Origin: Vitrella brassicaformis CCMP3155
Taxonomy: Eukaryota > Protista > Chromerida
Direction: 5' to 3'
DNA: 64,000 nt
Assembly: GCA_001179505.1 (NCBI GenBank)
Contig: CDMY01000336.1
Location: forward strand, 310,001 to 374,000
Positions 10,568 to 59,864 of the stretch are shown here, piece by piece (positions within the stretch are counted from its first letter, which is position 1; the number at the start of each line of letters is the position of its first letter). The notes under the pieces are model-generated. The model did no database searches. It saw only the letters and a list, made by a program, of their open reading frames with translations, and was not told the origin of the DNA. The translations under genes were made by a program, and so were the position numbers.

Positions 10568-10867
10568 NNNNNNNNNNNNNNNNNNNNNNNNNNNNNNNNN
10601 NNNNNNNNNNNNNNNNNNNNNNNNNNNNNNNNNNNNNNNNNNNNNNNNNNNNNNNNNNNNNNNNNNNNNNNNNNNNNNNNNNNNNNNNNNNNNNNNNNNN
10701 NNNNNNNNNNNNNNNNNNNNNNNNNNNNNNNNNNNNNNNNNNNNNNNNNNNNNNNNNNNNNNNNNNNNNNNNNNNNNNNNNNNNNNNNNNNNNNNNNNNN
10801 NNNNNNNNNNNNNNNNNNNNNNNNNNNNNNNNNNNNNNNNNNNNNNNNNNNNNNNNNNNNNNNNNNN
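10568..10867. other. Assembly gap (300 N)
   Basis: Run of exactly 300 N, starting immediately after a coding CAG of the helicase. Confidence 0.99.
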
Positions 10868-50447: not shown

Positions 50448-52655
50448 TCACTGCACACGCGGATGGAACTGCTTGAGCACTTCCTGGGCAGGGATGCTCT
50501 TGCCAGAGATCGCCGCGAATTTGTCCAAAAGGCATTTCTTCTGGTTCTCCAGCTCGTCGACCCGGGCCGACGCCCGCATGAGTGCCCTTGTAACCTCCTG
50601 TATCTGGCTGTCCCGCCCCATGAGCACCTGCTTCATGGCCTGCACTTCCTGCCGCGCATCCTGCACCTCCCTCTGCGCCTCGCTGATGGAGCCCTTGCCG
50701 TCCAGGTACGACGAGTGCATCGACTCGCGGGATGCAAACAGCCGGGTGATGAGCTGCTGCTTCTTCTTGAGCTCTTCTCGCAGATAGACGTTGGCTGACC
50801 GCTGACGAGACGACCAACACAAGGGGCACTCGGGGTGGTACGTACTGGCTTGAGCGGTGTAAGTTGTGTTGGGTGGTACCTCTTGCTTGAGTGCCTCGTT
50901 GAGCTCCGTGACACCCTCCTCCAGTTTGCCGCACTTTCTCTCGTTCTCCTGGTTGTTCTTGATTTGCTCACTGGACACACACACACACAGACATCAATGG
51001 GCATGCGCGTTTTCCAGCCCCCAAGCCATTCCGTTTCGCCCATGCCATGGGTATCTTACCGGTACATGTTGGAGAGGAGGGCCGAGTCTGCCTTGGTCTT
51101 CTCGAGTGTCTTTCTGGCCGTCTCGAGCTCTCGCTCAAGCTGGTCCTGGATGACGGCGCTGCCCCTGGCTGCTGCACTGCTGGCCAGGCTGATGGCAGTT
51201 GGGGCGGCCACGGGGTGGGCCACTGCCGACCGCTGCTCCTCCGCCTCATGCAGAGACCTCTTCAGTTCCTGATTCCTGCACACGAGCAAACAGACAGACA
51301 GACAGACAGGTGAGGTGAATGCGGGCAGCACAGCTTAGTGCGTGCCTGGTGCGCGTTTGTCATACTTGATTTCAAGCTGGTTGGCCTTGGTCTCCCACTC
51401 ACTCTTCTCGATCTGAAGTCTGGGGGAGGGGACGCAGTGCCACGGATGTACCCAGCCATGTGTGCTGTCTGCTGTGGACCAGCTCTCTCACTTTGAGATG
51501 AGTTCTGCCTGGCTCTTGGTCTTGGCAGTGAGGTTCTGGATCAGCTCGGTTGTCGGCGTGTACTTCACGCTCTGCAAACCGATTACAGAGCTACCAAGGT
51601 TGACTGTGCCATTCATAACCCACCGAACCATACCTACCTACCTTCAGCTGATTGATCTCGCCCTCCAGAGTGATGGTCTTCTTCCACATGGCGGTAAGCT
51701 CCCGCCGCAGGTCGCACTGCTGCATCTCCTGCTGTGCCGACTTGCCGTCGCGTGTCGGCGCCTCGATGATGACCATCTCGTTGCCAGCGGCATAGTTCCG
51801 CACCGCCCCGTCCAGCATGTCGATCTCCTTGGAGAGCTCAATCAACCGCACAGATGCCACCGGCGTGGCTGTGGGAGTGGCGAGGAGGGAGGGGTGGGTG
51901 TAGGGGCCGGGAGAGGGCACAATGGCTGGCAAGGGGGGCCGGTCGGGGATGACCCCGCTCTTGGCCTGCACGGCAAACGGACAGCCGGAGATGAGATGGC
52001 CCGTGGGCGTTTGGGGCTGTGATTGGGTCTCACTTGGAAGTCAATGATAAGGTTGTAGACTTCGGCGATGCCTGAGATGAAGACACGGACATAGACGCAC
52101 CGACAGACAACCCACAATCCATTCCAGATGCCGTGCAGTCACTCACTTGGTGTGCGCCTTACTGACCCCCTGCCGAGTACTTGCGCCTGATGCCGATATC
52201 CATCATGCAGACGGCACACCGATAGAGAATGGCATAGAGGAACTGATAGAGCACCGCCTCCCTCAGGTTGAGGAGGGTCAGGAGGGGCTCCAGCAGCTGA
52301 CCGGCCGCCTCCTCGCCCGAGGCCCCGCTCCGCCCTGCCAGGAACGAGTAGTTGATGGTGTACCCACTGACCCGCTTCACTGTCTGCTCGAGCGTGTGCA
52401 ATGGCGGGTTCCGGGTCGAAGAGTTGAACACCAGCTCATCGTCCACAATGGAACCGAGCCCCTGACCAGAGCAGGCACACGAAATTCATTCATCAGAGTC
52501 AGTCAGTCAGTGTGCAATGCAATGCGTGTCACGAGCGAGGCCCGTCAGTCAGTCACGTCGGTCACTTGTAGGAGTTGCAGAAGGTCGTTTTTGAGCGTCT
52601 CAATGATGTGAATGAAGTGGTCGCGGAAGCCAGGAGTGCGCTTGGTCCTCTCCAT
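50448..52655 (-). CDS. Multi-exon coiled-coil protein of unknown function (start may lie further upstream, to ~52850)
   Basis: Phase-consistent exons: MERTKRTPGFRDHFIHIIETLKNDLLQLLQ|GLGSIVDDELVFN..., DLRRELTAMWKKTITLEGEINQLK, QDQLERELETARKTLEK, SEAQREVQDARQEVQAMKQ...FHPRVQ*. Confidence 0.6.
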
Positions 52656-52996
52656 CGCTGCACCTGCACTGCTGACACTGCAGTCAGTACTGTAACACAC
52701 ACAAGAGGACGATGGCTGAGCCAGTCCTTCTCGTCATTCATAAAACGTGCTCACGGACTGTACCAGCAGGCTTTCTCTCCTTCACAAGGCTCCTTTCTTT
52801 TTCACCTTGAGCTTCCGACTTCAGGCGATAAGCTCGCAGGTGATGTTGGATTTTTTTCATCGTTGACAGCTCCATCGACGGCACAAGCCGCTGCCTCGAA
52901 AGCGTTTGCCGTCTGTCTATTCACATTAGTCATCATGAGACCCCGTTCGTTCGTATCCACACGTACGTACACATGAATGAACGTGTGACGACTCAC

Positions 52997-53200
52997 GTGA
53001 GTCGCCATAACGTACTTACGCTCAGCTCATGCATCCATCCCATCAGTCAGTCAGTCAGTCAGCATGCTTTGCCTTGCCTTGCCTTGCTCGTCGGCATTGC
53101 ATCTATCCACACATGCAAATGAATGAATGAATCCTGCCTGGTCGCCACGAGTCGTTCGTGAGTGAGTGAGTCGCCATAACGCTCATGCATCCATCAGTTA
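52997..53200 (+). repeat. Degenerate direct repeat pair in the intergenic low-complexity region
   Basis: gtgagtcgccataacg...ctcatgcatccatc...agt occurs at 52997-53060 and 53166-53198. The first copy carries extra 4-5-nt tandem units. Confidence 0.7.
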
Positions 53201-53349
53201 CACACGTGGCCGTATGTCGGGATACTGAGACACACACGCACACACACAGCCCTCCCTTCCCTCCCCTATCCTCTTCCCATCATAGTCGTCATGACGAGCA
53301 AGTCCCTCGCTGATCGATTGCTGGCGGCTTGCCTTGCCTGTTTGGGTGT

Positions 53350-54010
53350 GGTGTGCCATCCATGTATGGCGGCGACGCTCTCGATCGATGAGCATTGATG
53401 CCGATGGTCTTTCATGCGAGAGGGGAAATCGTGGGGGCTGAACGAACAGAATGTCAGGCAGGCACCAGACCCGACTCCTGCACACCCCCAACATACACAC
53501 ACATGGAAGGAAGACACACACATCCATCGATATGCCCACCACCGTGCCTGTCCCTCCCCCTCTGTCCATGCACTCACTCACGGTGAGTGAATGGCATGTC
53601 TTCGTGTGTGTGGCTCGGCTGAGGATGGATGCCATTCTTCCCATGGCGCGACGAGAACTTGTCGCCGACAATGGGATTACGTTTGCACCTCAGCTTGAGC
53701 AGCACCCTTCTTGCCGACCTGTGAGATCTGCTTACGGTATGCGGCCACGTCAGGTTGGCTGATGCGGTTGGTTGATGCGCTCCACGAAGGCGTCCTCCTC
53801 GTCGTTGTAGTAGGACGTCTTGGCCACACGATGGAGTCGCTGAGTGCTCAATCCTGCACCATGTCAGAGAGAGAGAGAGAGAGAGAGAGGGACGAATGGT
53901 TGGTGTCTGTGTCGATGTGCGTATGTGTGGTCTTTCTTGTTGACGTGCCGGCAGAGGGGTGAGCCTTCGGTGACTTTGGAGCCGATGAAGGGCAGCCCGT
54001 CCTTGTCTAG
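53350..54010 (-). pseudogene. RPA2: Disrupted fragment of the RNA polymerase I second-largest subunit (RPA2/RPA135/POLR1B), three exon remnants
   Basis: Minus strand gives [91 protein letters not shown] once 4-nt insertions are removed. GDKFSSRHG is the conserved two-barrel polymerase motif. The LDxDGLPxIGxxVxxGxPxC...Y...E.A.V/I context matches Rpa135 as I recall it. Confidence 0.85.
53866..53889 (+). repeat. (GA)n microsatellite, one example of the abundant intronic/intergenic SSRs
   Basis: Directly visible. Similar (CA)n, (GTCT)n, (CCAT)n, (CCCT)n and (CACAG)n tracts occur in most introns. Confidence 0.95.
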
Positions 54011-54893
54011 AGAGGTGACGGCCATCGTGTGTGTGCTACCGACCGACCAGAAAATCGTTGCGATCTGTGCGATTTTCTCAATCGATGCACCGGGGATGGC
54101 CTGCACAGCACAGCACAGCACAGCACAGCACACACACGAATGCGCACATCTCTCCCTCCTTCCCTGCTTGTGAGTGAGTGAGTGCATGTGGTGTGGACCC
54201 GCCGTGTCGCCTCGCCGAGCTCACCTCCCTGAGTTGCAGTGCGAGCATGCTCTTGAGGCGCCTGGTGGCGGCCGTGGGTGTGGATGTGACCTGCACGTGC
54301 CGCATTCGTCGCACACGGGGCTGCTTCGCCTCCCATTCCTCCATCCTGCAGGCAGGCAAGCGCCGCCCGCAACCAACACACACGCTCACGTGTATGTATG
54401 TTGGTTGCAATGCATGTGAGTGCGTTGCTGACTCGACGAGGTCCATTGTTTGCCACGTTGGAAGCTTCACGGGAAGAGTCTGACATGAGAGACGGACAGA
54501 CAGAAGGAGGAGGAGCGTACACGCACCTCTCCATTCAGTTACGATAAGACAGACAGGCCAGGTGCGGTGCGCACCGTTTTGATTTCCTGCAGGCCGGTCT
54601 CCCGGGGAAACACGTCACACTGCACACGCAACACAACACAACACACCAAGACGGCAGGCACCAAACATCAACATCCTTTGGAGGGACATCACATCCTTTG
54701 GTCTGTGTGTTCGTGCGTGTTGGTGGGTGTGCTATCTTCCCACCCTATCGGTCACTGTCGTCTGCGGTCGCCATCCATGTGGACAAGTAAGTAGTGAGTG
54801 ACACACATAGACAAACAGACAGACAGACAACCGGCTGACTGATGCATGCGTTAAAAGCCGAATGTGTGTGTGTGTGTGTGTGTGTGGGCTTGC

Positions 54894-55281
54894 TTACGGT
54901 CTGTATTGGAGGTGGTGCTGGATGAGCCGATTTGCCACCTTGGCGGTGGTGGGTGGTCGAGTCGGACTGGGGGCCATCCCTAGCTCCCATACCTTGAAAA
55001 TCTCGTACTCCTCCAGCCGCTCCTCATAGGACAGGAGGGGAGGGGGAGGCGCGTCTCGGCATGTCAGCCTGCGGTTGGGAGCGGGCGGCGCGTTGGGGTC
55101 TCTCTGGAGGATCGTGACCCCGCCGTACACCGGCTTGGCACCGCCGCCCCCTGGGTTGCCGACTGGTGGACTCGCCGCCGCACAGCTCCCCTTCGGCACC
55201 CACTTCTGCCGCCCCTTGGTCCCAGCCTGAGAGGGTGCCGCAGCGTCGCCTTGCTCTTTGCGCACCTCCTTGGCTACAGCG
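54894..55281 (-). CDS. C-terminal part of a small low-complexity protein with a SUZ-like segment; 5' end lost in the gap
   Basis: The open frame AKEVRKEQGDAAAP...GVTILQRDPNAPPAPNRR...LLSYEERLEEYEIFKVWELG...TAKVANRLIQHHLQYRP* resembles the SUZ pattern ILxR...SxEERExEY only weakly. Confidence 0.4.
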
Positions 55282-55581
55282 NNNNNNNNNNNNNNNNNNN
55301 NNNNNNNNNNNNNNNNNNNNNNNNNNNNNNNNNNNNNNNNNNNNNNNNNNNNNNNNNNNNNNNNNNNNNNNNNNNNNNNNNNNNNNNNNNNNNNNNNNNN
55401 NNNNNNNNNNNNNNNNNNNNNNNNNNNNNNNNNNNNNNNNNNNNNNNNNNNNNNNNNNNNNNNNNNNNNNNNNNNNNNNNNNNNNNNNNNNNNNNNNNNN
55501 NNNNNNNNNNNNNNNNNNNNNNNNNNNNNNNNNNNNNNNNNNNNNNNNNNNNNNNNNNNNNNNNNNNNNNNNNNNNNNNNN
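55282..55581. other. Assembly gap (300 N)
   Basis: Run of exactly 300 N. Confidence 0.99.
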
Positions 55582-57054: not shown

Positions 57055-59864
57055 TTATGCAAGCTGTCTATCGCTGACGATGCCGTGCTGCTTGAGGATC
57101 GTCTGGCTGACTCGCTGCACCACCTCCTTCTGCAAAACCAGCTCCTGCTCACCATCCATCTCAAAGATGAAGAAGCCCTCCGTGCCACTGCTGCCGCTGG
57201 TGCTGCTGCTGCTGCCCCCCTCAGCAGCACCTCCCCCAGCAGCCCCAGGATTGGCTGCATTATCACAAGCCAGCCCCCGTTGGCTGACAGGCAGGTCGTC
57301 TCTGTCCTCGAGCATGGTGACGAGGTGTTGGAGGTTCTTGACCTTGATCCCGTTCACCTTGTGGACCCTAGTGTGCTTGAGCTCGTAGCCCGATGTGATG
57401 TCGGAGGCCAGGATCTGGCTGACGATGACCACCTCCTCCCCCTCCTCCTTCTTGAAGTACTCCTGCAGCAGCTGGAGCAAAGCCGTCGGTGCGTTAGACA
57501 TGTACTTGCGCTGCCCGAACTCCTCGCGCAAATAATCCAGCGTCAAAGGGGTGAACACCAAACCACCTGAAGGGAAGGGACAAACAAACAAGTATCTGCA
57601 CATACATGAATTGGATGAGGCGGTGCTCTGTGCCATGTGTGCGTGTGTTGGCTGGGGTGAGCTGACTGACCGTATATGAAGTATCTGGGCGTCTTGTCCC
57701 ACTGGTGCTCAGGAATGAGTGAGTTGGAGGGGACCAGCGGGACAGAGATGTTGAGGACCCTGCCGTCCCGCAGGATCGTCAGCTCCACCTCCTCATCAGG
57801 GAACTTGTCCAGCAGCGCATACGACAGGCCCACCCGCTCCATGTTCCGAAACACTATGGTGCCTGCAGAAAGCAGCCAAGACAGGAAGGAACAGAGAAAG
57901 GACACATGATGCCAACGAGCCCCTTCGCTCATGCCTTGCATCTCTCTCTCTCCCACCCAGCTGACTGACCGTCGTCGGCCACGTCGTTGCCCGCAATGGC
58001 CATGATGACGTCCCGTTTCTTGAGAACAGTGCTGGTGCTGTTTGTGGTGCTGTCGCTGTCGACCTTGCCCTTCCTGGAGGGGTCCACCTGGCACACCACG
58101 ATGCCCGTCGCCGACACACCAGCAGGCAGGTCCTCCACCCTCACATCCGTCATGCCCAAATACTTGCGGAAGGATGGGTTCTCGAGCGTTTGGTAGATGA
58201 TGCCCAGCGTCACAAATCCTGCACACACACAGCAGCACAGCAGAGGGGATCATGATATACACACGTGTGGGGACAGACAGCTACTCTGTTGGTGACGTGT
58301 CTGTGTCGGTCGGTGTCTGACCAGTGTATTTGTGGTGCTGCTCGAGGTCTTTCAAGAACCGATTCACCACCACTGTCGGGATAATGTAGCCTGCACACGC
58401 CAAACCGACACATGACAACCACACCACAGTGCTCATTCCACGTGTTCGTCCCGCCCCGCCTGGGCTGCTCGACTGCCTGGCACACCGCCCCGCACCCACT
58501 GACCCACCGATGCTCTGCGCCTCGTCATATCCCTGGAAAGCCACGCCCACCACCTTGCCATCCTTGTTGACCGCCGGGCCCCCCGAGTTGCCCGCATTGA
58601 TGGCCGCATCAATCTGGGTGCACAGCAGCCTGAAGTTGCCGTGCGTGTAGCTCAGGATGTCGTTCCTGGACACAACGCCAGCCGTGATACACAGGGAGTC
58701 GCCGCCCATCGGGTACCCCACAACCACCAAAGGGTCCTGCAGCATCGGAGTCTCGCCGAAGGTCAGTGGGTTGACGTCCTTCCCTGCATGTTCGCACAGC
58801 ATACATGGAGGCAGGCAGGCAGACAGGTGGGACGTGGGTACGGTGCAGACGTGTGCGTATCGCATGTGGGTGGTGTTGGTGTGTGTGCGTATGTACAGAA
58901 TTCCTCGTCGTCGACTGTCACGACGGCCAGATCGCATTCGTGACCCGAGGCAATGAGGCGTGCCGGGTACTTCTTGGCGTCCCCATGCTTCCTTATCAAT
59001 ATCCGATTCTGCACGCACACGTGTAAACCAACCATACCCACCCACACTCAGACGCACACACCGGCACCGCACACGTCTGTTTCCCTACCTACCTGGTTAG
59101 CCACCACGTGCGCATTGGTGATGATGCGCCGATCCTCAATGATAAAACCTGACAACCAACAACCATCCAATCCAATACCAAATCAATCGGCCCCTTGTCT
59201 GATGTCTGGTGTCAGATCAGTCACCTGATCCGGTGGTTTTGGTTTGCCTCCTCATTTGCCATGGCATGGCGAAACTCGGGTCGGTGTAGTCGACAAACAC
59301 CTTGACCACCGAGGGAAAGATCGCATTGAAGCCGCCCTCTGCGGAGACGAGAGGCTGTGGGTGGGGCTGTGCATGTGGCGGCACGTCTGGCCGGAGGACC
59401 TCATCCTGCTCACTCTCCTCCCGCGGCTCGATGCCCACACGGATGTCGCCTCCAGCCGCATGAAGCGCACTCAGCGACATACATCGTGCTGCCGAGGGCC
59501 GCCAATGCATGCTACCGCCGCTGCAGCCGCCGTGGCTCCTGCATGACCGCAGAAGGGAGGATGCGAGCGTGGTGGCCGCTGACGGGTGCTGCTGCCTCAA
59601 AGAATGGGACGTGTGCCTGCGTGCGGTGTGCTGCGCCCTCCGGTTGGCCGTGAATGCCATGACGGCCGGCGAGGGAAGGAAGCCGCTGTTAGCCGCCGCG
59701 ATGTTCTTGTGCCGTCGTGCATGTTGGTGCAGCGCCGATGCGCCCATTGCGGCCTGCGCCTTGCGAGCGGATATCCCGCTGCCACTCATCAGCATGATGA
59801 AAGCTGAGAAGAAGGCGGGCCAGATCTGCGATGAGAACCACCGTCGTGCTTTTCCCTTGGGCAT
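57055..59864 (-). CDS. DEGP: Deg/HtrA trypsin-like serine protease with PDZ domains (plant Deg2/9/10-like)
   Basis: PSVVKVF...PWQ...[13 protein letters not shown] (His), GHECDLAVV (Asp), [35 protein letters not shown] (Ser). PDZ-like [14 protein letters not shown]...DVIMAIAG and [13 protein letters not shown]...[12 protein letters not shown]. Hydrophobic/basic N-terminal extension suggests organellar targeting. Confidence 0.93.

What the first reader, a model, noticed from the sequence alone, without database searches (positions are those of the whole stretch)
53350..53860. RNA Pol I subunit (RPA2) relic broken almost exclusively by serial 4-bp tandem duplications
Read on the minus strand, the RPA2 remnant keeps high amino-acid similarity but is frameshifted again and again by 4-nt insertions, most of them exact tandem duplications. 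Plus-strand positions: AACC 53766-53773, CATC 53624-53631, TCAC 53583-53590, CCTG 53455-53462, GTTC 53440-53447, TCGA 53381-53388, probably ATGG 53356-53363, plus an imperfect ATGA/AAGA (53408-53415) and a 4-nt insertion near 53395. Deleting one unit of each restores ERINRI, RHG..GILSR, and [29 protein letters not shown]. Deleting the TCAC unit also restores phase 0 across the intact gtgagt...gtgcag intron (F-T|E-S-G). Five such events fall in about 85 nt of one exon, while substitutions are few. Two further shifts (a +1 near 53705 and one in a CA run near 53605) are not clean 4-mers. Inference: this lineage has a strong mutational mechanism making 4-bp duplications, such as fill-in and religation of 4-nt staggered breaks or transposon excision footprints, which would also explain the tetranucleotide SSRs filling its introns. 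A less likely but more exciting alternative is that the insertions are removed at the RNA level.
Basis: partly seen in the sequence, partly recalled or inferred. Interest (0 to 1): 0.88.

Follow-up and report, generated by a model that had tools for sequence, protein, structure and literature searches.

The report
RPA2 pseudogene broken by 4-base duplications
This is a dead but still transcribed fragment of the RNA polymerase I second-subunit gene, broken mainly by exact 4-base tandem duplications that are real in the DNA and kept in the RNA, so it records an unusual mutation habit of this alga's genome and not any repair at the RNA level.

Summary
On the minus strand, 54100-53355 carries a roughly 140-residue internal piece of RPA2 (Pfam Rpb2 domain 6, positions 117-279). 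In its best-conserved 72 codons the frame is broken by eight 4-nt insertions and one 1-nt deletion. Six insertions are exact tandem duplications, one is imperfect and one is not a duplication. With them removed, the peptide aligns without gaps to human RPA2 (32 of 36 identical).

Independent DNA contigs carry the duplications. Spliced RNA contigs carry all of them too, so RNA-level removal is refuted. About three paralogous copies exist. Contigs from them lack CCTG, TCAC and CATC, so these are insertions gained at this locus.

One correction: the "AACC" event lies inside a 13-nt imperfect tandem duplication.

Across the window, two-copy tandem 4-mers are about 2.1 times expected. Tandem 5-, 6-, 8- and 9-mers are also in excess. 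Half of the excess 4-mers have no flanking microhomology, the motifs are diverse, and dispersed repeats are nearly absent. This favours fill-in and ligation of staggered breaks (TOP2-like) over slippage or transposon footprints, but the mechanism is inferred.

The intact parent gene could not be fetched. Other readers of this scan noted the same pattern elsewhere in this genome. The locus itself is ordinary; the mutational signature is moderately interesting.

The parts
54225..54345 (-). Upstream exon of the relic transcript, with no detectable RPA2 or Pfam similarity. It starts after a tgcag acceptor, so further exons lie upstream.
   Evidence: RNA contigs X13 rec 26 and X11 rec 14 end or join at 54344/54224. 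No Pfam hit.
54101..54224 (-). Intron (GT-AG), holding a GCACA pentanucleotide array.
   Evidence: RNA contig X13 rec 26 joins 54224 to the exon downstream. The sequence is and the array.
53949..54100 (-). RPA2-derived exon, read in one frame. It includes the [11 protein letters not shown] motif region.
   Evidence: Yeast Rpa135 839-862 is the best PDB hit. tblastn with a fungal RPA2 ORF. Weak PF00562 match at profile positions 117-154.
53854..53948 (-). Intron spliced as GC-AG. The RPA2 frame shifts by one across this junction, for a reason not resolved.
   Evidence: RNA contig X11 rec 12 joins 53948 to 53852 with 0 differences. Frames.
53582..53853 (-). RPA2-derived exon holding the GDKFSSRHG motif. 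The motif is followed by KNG where references have QKG.
   Evidence: PF00562 at E 9e-10. Pol I RPA2 chains are among the best PDB hits.
53753..53779 (-). It shifts the frame by +1 under either reading.
   Evidence: TRF period 13, 2.1 copies, 92%. Sequence.
53624..53631 (-). Exact 4-nt tandem duplication CATC/CATC.
   Evidence: A paralogous DNA contig lacks 4 nt at 53623.
53603..53614 (-). CA run with a net 1-nt deletion.
   Evidence: The relic has 9 residues where three RPA2 structures have 8, after allowing +4 for CATC. A paralogous contig shows net +1 here.
53583..53590 (-). Exact 4-nt tandem duplication TCAC/TCAC at the end of the exon.
   Evidence: Paralogous contigs in X1 and X12 lack 4 nt at 53582.
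53478..53581 (-). Intron (GT-AG). It is shared with the paralogues and itself holds four tandem 4-mers.
   Evidence: RNA contig X13 rec 25 joins 53581 to 53476. Paralogous DNA contigs align through it. Tandems listed.
53355..53477 (-). Last RPA2-derived stretch ([33 protein letters not shown] after mending). The transcript runs on unspliced to at least 52954.
   Evidence: RNA contigs X13 rec 25, X11 rec 11 and rec 10.
53455..53462 (-). Exact 4-nt tandem duplication CCTG/CCTG.
   Evidence: Contigs lacking 4 nt at 53455 stand in X1, X11 and X12 beside contigs that keep them.
53440..53447 (-). Exact 4-nt tandem duplication GTTC/GTTC.
53408..53415 (-). Imperfect 4-nt tandem duplication ATGA/AAGA.
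53395..53398 (-). 4-nt insertion (TCAA or CAAT) with no tandem template.
53381..53388 (-). Exact 4-nt tandem duplication TCGA/TCGA.
53356..53363 (-). Exact 4-nt tandem ATGG/ATGG at the very end of detectable homology. It is a probable insertion.
   Evidence: Homology ends here, so there is no downstream check.

Best explanation
**Shown.** The locus is an unprocessed, intron-bearing duplicate of an internal fragment of the RNA polymerase I subunit RPA2 gene. It covers about 140 residues of Rpb2 domain 6. Earlier scan notes name the genome as the chromerid alga Vitrella brassicaformis; I did not verify that.

The locus is no longer a polymerase gene, yet it is still transcribed at a low level and spliced at its old intron sites. 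Its frame has been destroyed stepwise at the DNA level, mostly by insertions of exactly 4 nt that copy the adjacent 4 nt. The RNA carries all of them.

**Inferred from the window.** These events are the local record of a genome-wide, insertion-biased micro-duplication process with these properties:
- the mode is 4 nt, with 5-6 nt less frequent;
- it acts on almost any tetramer;
- it needs no flanking microhomology;
- it also seeds the tetra- and pentanucleotide repeats of the introns.

**Inferred mechanism, about 0.4 on its own.** Double-strand breaks with short 5' staggers are filled in and blunt-ligated. This is what happens to cleanly deproteinised topoisomerase II cleavage complexes, which leave 4-nt overhangs.
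For: **Identity.**
- PDB best hits are Pol I RPA2 or Rpa135 chains.
- PF00562 is hit at profile positions 117-279.
- No other RPA2 piece exists in the window.

**Frame breaks.**

**DNA reality and RNA retention.**
- X1 contig rec 3 covers 53534-53799 with 0 differences.
- X13 RNA rec 25 covers 53279-53476 joined to 53581-53798 with 0 differences.
- X11 RNA rec 12 covers 53581-53852 joined to 53948-54076 with 0 differences.

**Insertions are derived and stepwise.**
- Paralogous contigs lack CCTG, TCAC and CATC.
- On my reconstruction from a truncated table, a second paralogue appears to keep a CATC-like duplication and to have no gap at TCAC, while differing by other indels. If so, events are partly shared and accumulated over time.
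- Up to three variant contigs per site stand beside the relic at single-copy depth.

**Size spectrum.**
- 8 of 9 events in 72 conserved codons are +4, none is a codon indel, and none is a 4-nt deletion.
- Against one paralogue, 3 of about 5 indel events net 4 nt. One of these is in the intron, counting adjacent +3 and +1 gaps as one event.

**Genome habit.**
- Two-copy tandem 4-mers: 420 against 194-202 expected. 5-mers: 155 against 59. Tetranucleotide arrays of 3 or more copies: 55 against about 1.
- Fewer lie in long open segments (5.8/kb) than outside them (8.9/kb).

**Mechanism.**
- The run-length fractions of the excess are 0.50/0.26/0.15/0.10, against 0.56/0.28/0.11/0.04 expected for blunt duplication. 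Microhomology-primed slippage would leave none at length 8.
- Motifs spread over all 33 classes.
- The 4-nt overhang fill-in route is documented in PMC8795545 and bioRxiv 10.1101/2020.05.03.075358.
Against: - The parent gene was never retrieved, so polarity and substitution counts rest on protein references and on a truncated difference table (one search hides 27 indel rows).
- A pure TOP2 model predicts a ceiling of 4 nt. Tandem 5-, 6-, 8- and 9-mers are also in excess, and the relic holds a 13-nt duplication.
- Event density is about 56 per kb in the last RPA2 stretch, against 8.9 per kb in the window's non-open DNA.
- The whole relic locus, 53270-54350, has 14.8 per kb.
- Window statistics cannot see 1-3-nt duplications properly.
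- None of NHEJ, TDP1 or TOP2 was examined in this genome.
- The organism name comes from earlier AI notes only.
Confidence: 0.8

Rival explanations
1. Replication slippage, combined with weak repair of 4-5-nt insertion loops (a MutS-beta or MSH3-type deficit, as in tetranucleotide instability), makes the duplications and expands them into repeats.
For: - Tetra- and pentanucleotide arrays are hugely enriched (55 and 12 against about 1 and 0).
- The motif classes most enriched as two-copy tandems (ACAG, ACTC, ATCC, AGGG, ACTG) are also those that form arrays.
- 5-6-nt events fit a loop-size window better than a fixed 4-nt stagger does.
- The excess is slightly richer in runs of 10-11 nt than blunt duplication predicts.
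Against: - About half of the excess 4-mer and 5-mer tandems have no flanking microhomology at all.
A slipped 3' end would have nothing to pair with.
- Slippage explains growth of existing repeats, not the birth of a duplication in unique coding sequence.
Confidence: 0.3
2. The cluster in the last RPA2 stretch is a local hot spot, or the scar of one or a few error-prone repair-synthesis patches, and not a sample of the genome-wide rate.
For: - Five 4-nt insertions fall in 82 nt.
- The densest 2% of 130-nt windows hold 4 or more tandem 4-mers, and this locus is among them.
- The locus is transcribed, and the TOP2-type signature rises with transcription in tumours (PMC8795545).
Against: - On my reconstruction, events look partly shared between paralogues, so they seem to have arisen at different times.
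- By my count, the relic's own introns are as dense (7 in 323 nt) as its exons (8 in 549 nt).
- Other non-coding patches of the window reach the same density.
Confidence: 0.12
3. The duplications are footprints left by excision of cut-and-paste transposons that make 4-bp target-site duplications.
For: A target-site duplication left behind after clean excision would look like an exact 4-bp tandem duplication.
Against: - Self-comparison of the 64-kb window finds a single 119-nt repeat pair, so no resident element family is visible.
- The duplicated tetramers are diverse and roughly track tetramer abundance.
- No element-end remnants accompany them.
- 5-, 6-, 8-, 9- and 13-nt duplications occur as well.
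Confidence: 0.04
4. The locus is a working gene whose reading frame is kept open by sets of compensating +4 insertions. It would encode a new protein built partly from RPA2 segments.
For: - The spliced transcript has an unbroken frame of about 250 codons (54344 to the stop near 53266).
- That frame re-enters the RPA2 frame five times, and +4 events fall in threes.
Against: - 18% of random histories with the same kinds of events keep the frame open over the tested stretch.
- With only +4 events, one segment in three is in frame anyway.
- The active-site motif is altered.
- Only a fragment of one domain remains.
- No homologue of the out-of-frame parts was found.
Confidence: 0.04
5. The 4-nt units are removed from the RNA (editing or tiny introns), or they are assembly or sequencing errors.
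For: None was found. One RNA run does hold a contig without the CCTG unit.
Against: - Spliced RNA contigs from two runs keep every unit with 0 differences.
- The contigs without CCTG also occur in DNA runs, and the other expressed variant contig carries extra substitutions, so these are paralogues.
- Independent DNA contigs agree with the assembly.
Confidence: 0.01

Closest known systems
Unprocessed (duplicated) transcribed pseudogene
   Same: - It keeps the parent's introns, and these are shared with paralogous copies.
- It has multiple frameshifts and covers only part of the gene.
- It is still transcribed and spliced.
   Different: Its decay is dominated by +4 tandem duplications. The usual pattern, from my own knowledge, is 1-nt indels, deletions and stop codons.
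Topoisomerase II-dependent de novo duplications: yeast top2-F1025Y,R1128G and K720N, etoposide treatment, and human TOP2A K743N with COSMIC ID17 (bioRxiv 10.1101/2020.05.03.075358; PMC8795545)
   Same: - Exact duplications of up to 4 bp arise in non-repetitive sequence.
- No microhomology is needed.
- The published explanation is fill-in of the 4-nt 5' overhang followed by NHEJ ligation.
- The signature is linked to transcription, and the relic is transcribed.
   Different: - There it is a somatic or laboratory signature of a mutant, overexpressed or poisoned enzyme. Sizes are 1-4 or 2-4 bp, plus deletions in tumours.
- Here it would be a germline, lineage-wide habit with mode 4, a tail at 5-9 nt, and no 2-3-nt events in the relic.
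- Enzyme dependence is untested here.
[quoted passage not shown]
   Same: 80-90% of short insertions there are simple or complex tandem duplications. Primates show an unexplained, significant peak at lengths 4 and 8.
   Different: In those genomes length-4 insertions are a minor bump on a falling distribution. Here they are the majority class: 8 of 9 events in the aligned stretch.
Tetranucleotide-repeat instability with MSH3 loss (EMAST; from my own knowledge, not checked here)
   Same: It selectively destabilises units of about 4 nt and enriches tetranucleotide repeat changes.
   Different: It changes the length of existing arrays and does not create duplications in unique sequence. The MSH3 status of this genome is unknown.

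Membership tests
Functional RNA polymerase I subunit RPA2 gene | Full set of Rpb2 domains (PF04563, PF04561, PF04565, PF06883, PF00562, PF04560) | tested here: not met
   Only PF00562 positions 117-279 are present. tblastn with a full fungal RPA2 finds nothing else in the window. Real RPA2 proteins carry all six domains.
Functional RNA polymerase I subunit RPA2 gene | Uninterrupted reading frame through domain 6 | tested here: not met
   At least 11 frame changes.
Functional RNA polymerase I subunit RPA2 gene | Conserved SRHGQKG motif | tested here: not met
   The relic reads SRHGKNG. At the two diagnostic sites all three paralogous contigs carry the reference K codon and two carry the reference Q codon (53634, 53639).
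Unprocessed (duplicated) pseudogene | Retains parental introns | tested here: met
   Three introns are spliced in RNA. Intron 53478-53581 aligns with paralogous DNA contigs.
Unprocessed (duplicated) pseudogene | Disabling mutations relative to a functional relative | tested here: met
Unprocessed (duplicated) pseudogene | An intact parent gene elsewhere in the genome | tested here: inconclusive
   About three further copies are seen at single-copy depth. One is in frame over 53582-53645 as I reconstructed it. No copy could be fetched.
TOP2-type de novo duplication signature (ID17-like) | Exact duplications of up to 4 bp in non-repetitive sequence | tested here: met
   Six exact 4-nt duplications in former coding sequence.
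TOP2-type de novo duplication signature (ID17-like) | Size ceiling of 4 nt, set by the overhang | tested here: not met
   Tandem 5-, 6-, 8- and 9-mers are also in excess. The relic holds a 13-nt duplication.
TOP2-type de novo duplication signature (ID17-like) | No requirement for flanking microhomology | tested here: met
   The excess run-length distribution is close to the blunt-duplication expectation.
TOP2-type de novo duplication signature (ID17-like) | Dependence on TOP2 cleavage complexes, clean end processing and NHEJ | not testable with these tools
   Needs genetics or drug treatment, and the genome's repair-gene inventory.
TOP2-type de novo duplication signature (ID17-like) | Enrichment in transcribed DNA | tested here: inconclusive
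   The relic is transcribed and has 14.8 tandem 4-mers per kb, against 8.9 outside long open segments. This is a single locus.
Transposon excision footprints | Resident element family and target-site preference | tested here: not met
   One 119-nt repeat pair in 64 kb. Duplicated motifs are diverse.
RNA-level correction of frameshifts | Transcripts of this locus lack the inserted bases that its DNA has | tested here: not met
   Spliced RNA contigs keep all units. The unit-free or variant contigs also occur in DNA, and those whose substitutions could be read differ from the relic there too.

The most novel reading that the evidence does not exclude
Vitrella has a constitutive germline mutational signature of the topoisomerase II / ID17 type. 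Fill-in and ligation of 4-nt staggered breaks would be its main source of indels. It would outnumber 1-nt indels, be insertion-biased, kill duplicated genes within a few per cent of substitution divergence, and seed the tetranucleotide repeats that fill its introns.
Probability: 0.3. Interest if true: 0.7.

Novelty: new variant of a known kind. Interest (0 to 1): 0.45.

Why it matters
**The locus.** It is an ordinary dead gene copy.

**The value lies in the signature.**
- It is a clean natural record of a mutation class that is rare elsewhere. Former coding sequence gives a known starting state, so each event can be counted.
- If the pattern holds genome-wide, this alga would be a natural model for how staggered breaks are repaired and for how tetranucleotide microsatellites are born.
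- The yeast and tumour work on topoisomerase II predicted such consequences for genome evolution (bioRxiv 10.1101/2020.05.03.075358).

**Annotation.** Gene models in this genome may hide 4-nt frameshifts behind implausible introns. Pseudogenes here can stay transcribed, spliced and open-framed.

Tried and rejected
**Fetching the intact parent RPA2 failed five ways.**
- The exhaustive representative search with the 58-aa exon gave only chance hits to a repeat protein.
- Two word-index searches with relic open frames found nothing.
- A region search seeded with a fungal RPA2 ORF returned only fungal proteins among its 120 listed hits.
- An exact-product look-up of a long window ORF was not on record.

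**Other dead ends.**
- A 26-nt exact pattern scan of metagenome contigs found only other organisms' genes for the second-largest subunit of nuclear RNA polymerases: fungal Pol I (RPA2) and, by C-terminal motifs read by eye, probably Pol III. They match locally over 28-41 nt. I used them only as protein references.
- Rfam found nothing in the window.
- Self-BLAST gave no paralogous pairs from which to build an indel spectrum.

**Ideas rejected.**
- RNA-level removal, assembly artefact and transposon footprints. The reasons are under the rival explanations.
- A selected open frame.

**Literature.** No paper linking Vitrella to microsatellites or indel spectra turned up, and none on its end-joining genes.

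Full report
**The observation.**
I removed one unit of each of eight 4-nt units between 53631 and 53356 and put a placeholder at a 1-nt gap in the CA run. This turns a three-frame patchwork into one continuous reading.

The last 36 residues of that reading align without a gap to human RPA2 residues 900-935. Identity is 32 of 36 and E is 1e-15. The three best solved structures are all Pol I second subunits. Pfam places the pieces at positions 117-279 of RNA_pol_Rpb2_6.

The exon holding the GDKFSSRHG motif has nine residues between GI and DMPF where three RPA2 structures have eight. That equals +4 (CATC) and -1 (CA run). The tally in 72 well-conserved codons is:
- six exact 4-nt tandem duplications (CATC, TCAC, CCTG, GTTC, TCGA, ATGG);
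- one imperfect duplication (ATGA/AAGA);
- one 4-nt insertion without a template (TCAA/CAAT);
- one 1-nt deletion;
- no codon-sized indel and no 4-nt deletion.

An arbitrary 4-nt insertion copies its neighbour about once in 128, so six of eight cannot be chance.

Two corrections apply. The AACC pair sits inside a 13-nt imperfect tandem duplication at 53753-53779, 12 of 13 identical. It may therefore be a 13-nt event plus a substitution. A further frame change at the exon junction 53949/53853 is unresolved.

**What the locus is.**
tblastn with a complete fungal RPA2 reading frame, taken from a metagenome contig, finds RPA2 similarity only at 54016-53954 and 53711-53586. The relic is therefore an internal fragment of about 140 residues, not a whole gene.

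On the same strand upstream lie:
- the 3' end of a gene with a weak SUZ-domain match;
- a DegP-type protease, with Trypsin_2 and PDZ_3;
- an assembly gap at 55282-55581.

Earlier notes of this scan name the genome as Vitrella brassicaformis. I could not verify this, because run names are coded.

**Reads.**
I laid Logan contigs of one DNA-like run (X1), two RNA runs (X11, X13) and one marine sediment metagenome (X12) on 51200-55200.
- X1 contigs match the window with no differences across the duplications.
- RNA contigs are spliced at 54224/54101 (GT-AG), 53948/53854 (GC-AG) and 53581/53478 (GT-AG).
- These RNA contigs carry every duplication unchanged. One example is X13 record 25, covering 53279-53476 joined to 53581-53798 with 0 differences.

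The relic is therefore transcribed and spliced, and nothing is removed from the RNA.

Other contigs align at 80-95% identity, including through intron 53478-53581. Up to three such contigs stand at one site, each at single-copy depth, so there are about three paralogous copies.
- One contig lacks 4 nt at 53582 (TCAC) and at 53623 (CATC). It has a net +1 in the CA run and carries the reference codons for QKG. As I reconstruct it, this copy is in frame over that stretch.
- Contigs lacking 4 nt at 53455 (CCTG) occur in DNA, RNA and the metagenome, beside contigs that keep it.
- A second paralogue is also expressed. On my reconstruction it keeps a CATC-like duplication with one extra C and differs by +5, +1 and +1.

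On that reconstruction events are partly shared between copies, which fits stepwise accumulation. The difference table was truncated (27 indel rows hidden), so this reconstruction is partial. Between the relic and the first paralogue, about five indel events fall in 195 nt. Three of them net 4 nt, including one in the intron at a TCCC tandem, where I count adjacent +3 and +1 gaps as one event.

**The genome around it.**
- Two-copy tandem 4-mers number 420, against 194 (order-3 null) or 202 (order-1 null).
- Tandem 5-mers number 155 against 59, 6-mers 52 against 14-17, 8-mers 11 against about 1, and 9-mers 8 against 0.3.
- Tetranucleotide arrays of three or more copies number 55 against about 1.
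- The method cannot judge 1-3-nt events.
- Tandem 4-mers are fewer in long open segments (5.8 per kb) than outside them (8.9 per kb). Tandem 3- and 6-mers are not depleted there. This fits selection against frameshifts.
- The relic locus has 14.8 per kb. By my count from the tandem list and the RNA-defined boundaries, its introns hold 7 in 323 nt and its exons 8 in 549 nt.
- The locus is among the denser patches of the window but is not unique.

**Mechanism.**
Three window-level tests bear on it.
- Among the excess tandem 4-mers, the shares of run lengths 8, 9, 10 and 11 are 0.50, 0.26, 0.15 and 0.10. Duplicating a random tetramer with no homology requirement predicts 0.56, 0.28, 0.11 and 0.04. 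Slippage primed by at least one paired base predicts none at length 8. Tandem 5-mers behave alike.
- The duplicated tetramers cover all 33 motif classes at 0.2-1.6 times their abundance. CpG-containing classes are low, and array-forming classes are modestly high.
- The window has almost no dispersed repeats, which speaks against transposon footprints.

Blunt copying of a short unit is what filling in and ligating a 5'-staggered break produces. For 4 nt this route is documented for topoisomerase II cleavage complexes in yeast and in tumours with TOP2A K743N, where it also tracks transcription.

The excess of 5-9-nt duplications and the 13-nt event argue against a pure TOP2 origin. A loop-repair weakness would explain array growth, but it would not explain duplication births without microhomology. 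I put staggered-break fill-in at about 0.4, slippage with weak loop repair at about 0.3, and the rest on mixtures or local effects.

**Other readings.**
The spliced transcript keeps an open frame of about 250 codons that re-enters the RPA2 frame five times. However, 18% of random histories with the same kinds of events stay open over the tested stretch. Only a fragment of one domain survives. I do not read this as selection.

**Comparison and novelty.**
- The locus is a standard unprocessed, transcribed pseudogene.
- That short insertions are mostly tandem duplications is established for primates and flies, where a small unexplained peak at 4 and 8 nt was noted.
- What differs here is the dominance of +4 events, the insertion bias, and the high ratio to substitutions.
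- No paper on this in Vitrella turned up.
- Other first readers of this scan reported the same 4-5-nt micro-duplication pattern in a second RPA2 relic 8.7 kb beyond this window and in cupin and spherulin pseudogenes. These notes are unchecked and are not independent proof.

**Limits.**
- The parent gene was not retrieved.
- Only one read-laying run was available.
- The statistics come from a single 64-kb window.

Noticed in passing
window 54344-53266, minus strand, spliced: The spliced relic transcript has an unbroken reading frame of about 250 codons starting at an ATG. It weaves in and out of the RPA2 frame, and +4 events fall in threes. A simulation shows 18% of random histories stay open over the tested stretch, so this is probably chance.
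   Followed up: partly
window 53854-53948, minus strand: RNA contigs splice this intron as GC-AG. The RPA2 frame changes by one across the junction, so the original donor may have been lost.
   Followed up: partly
window 53753-53779: A 13-nt imperfect tandem duplication (12/13) lies inside the relic exon. Micro-duplications here are therefore not limited to 4-5 nt.
   Followed up: partly
whole window: The size spectrum of exact two-copy tandem duplications has a hole at 7 nt (3 against 4 expected), while 8- and 9-mers are 9 and 27 times expected. Unexplained.
   Followed up: no
window 54897-55280 and 57058-59084, minus strand: Upstream on the same strand lie the 3' end of a gene with a weak SUZ-domain match and a DegP-type protease (Trypsin_2 plus PDZ_3). 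The relic's first seen exon starts at a splice acceptor, so it may be spliced onto an upstream transcript.
   Followed up: partly
window 10568-10867 and 55282-55581: Two assembly gaps of exactly 300 N. The second lies 1 kb upstream of the relic.
   Followed up: no
window 51200-55200 in run X12: Marine sediment metagenomes of 2025 hold parts of this locus at about 100% identity (contigs with 0 differences at 52548-52966 and 53046-53220). The organism or a very close strain therefore lives in that sediment and could supply natural variation.
   Followed up: no
L001-L006 (skin metagenome contigs) against window 53641-53668: A 28-nt stretch coding GDKFSSRHG is identical between this alga's relic and Malassezia-type fungal RPA2 genes. 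This probably reflects a conserved motif combined with similar GC-rich codon use.
   Followed up: no
window 51309/53043 and 54800 region: read laying reported many high-depth 'joints' between tetranucleotide arrays (ACAG, TCAG, AGAC). These are repeat cross-matches, not splicing, and they show how common the same arrays are genome-wide.
   Followed up: no
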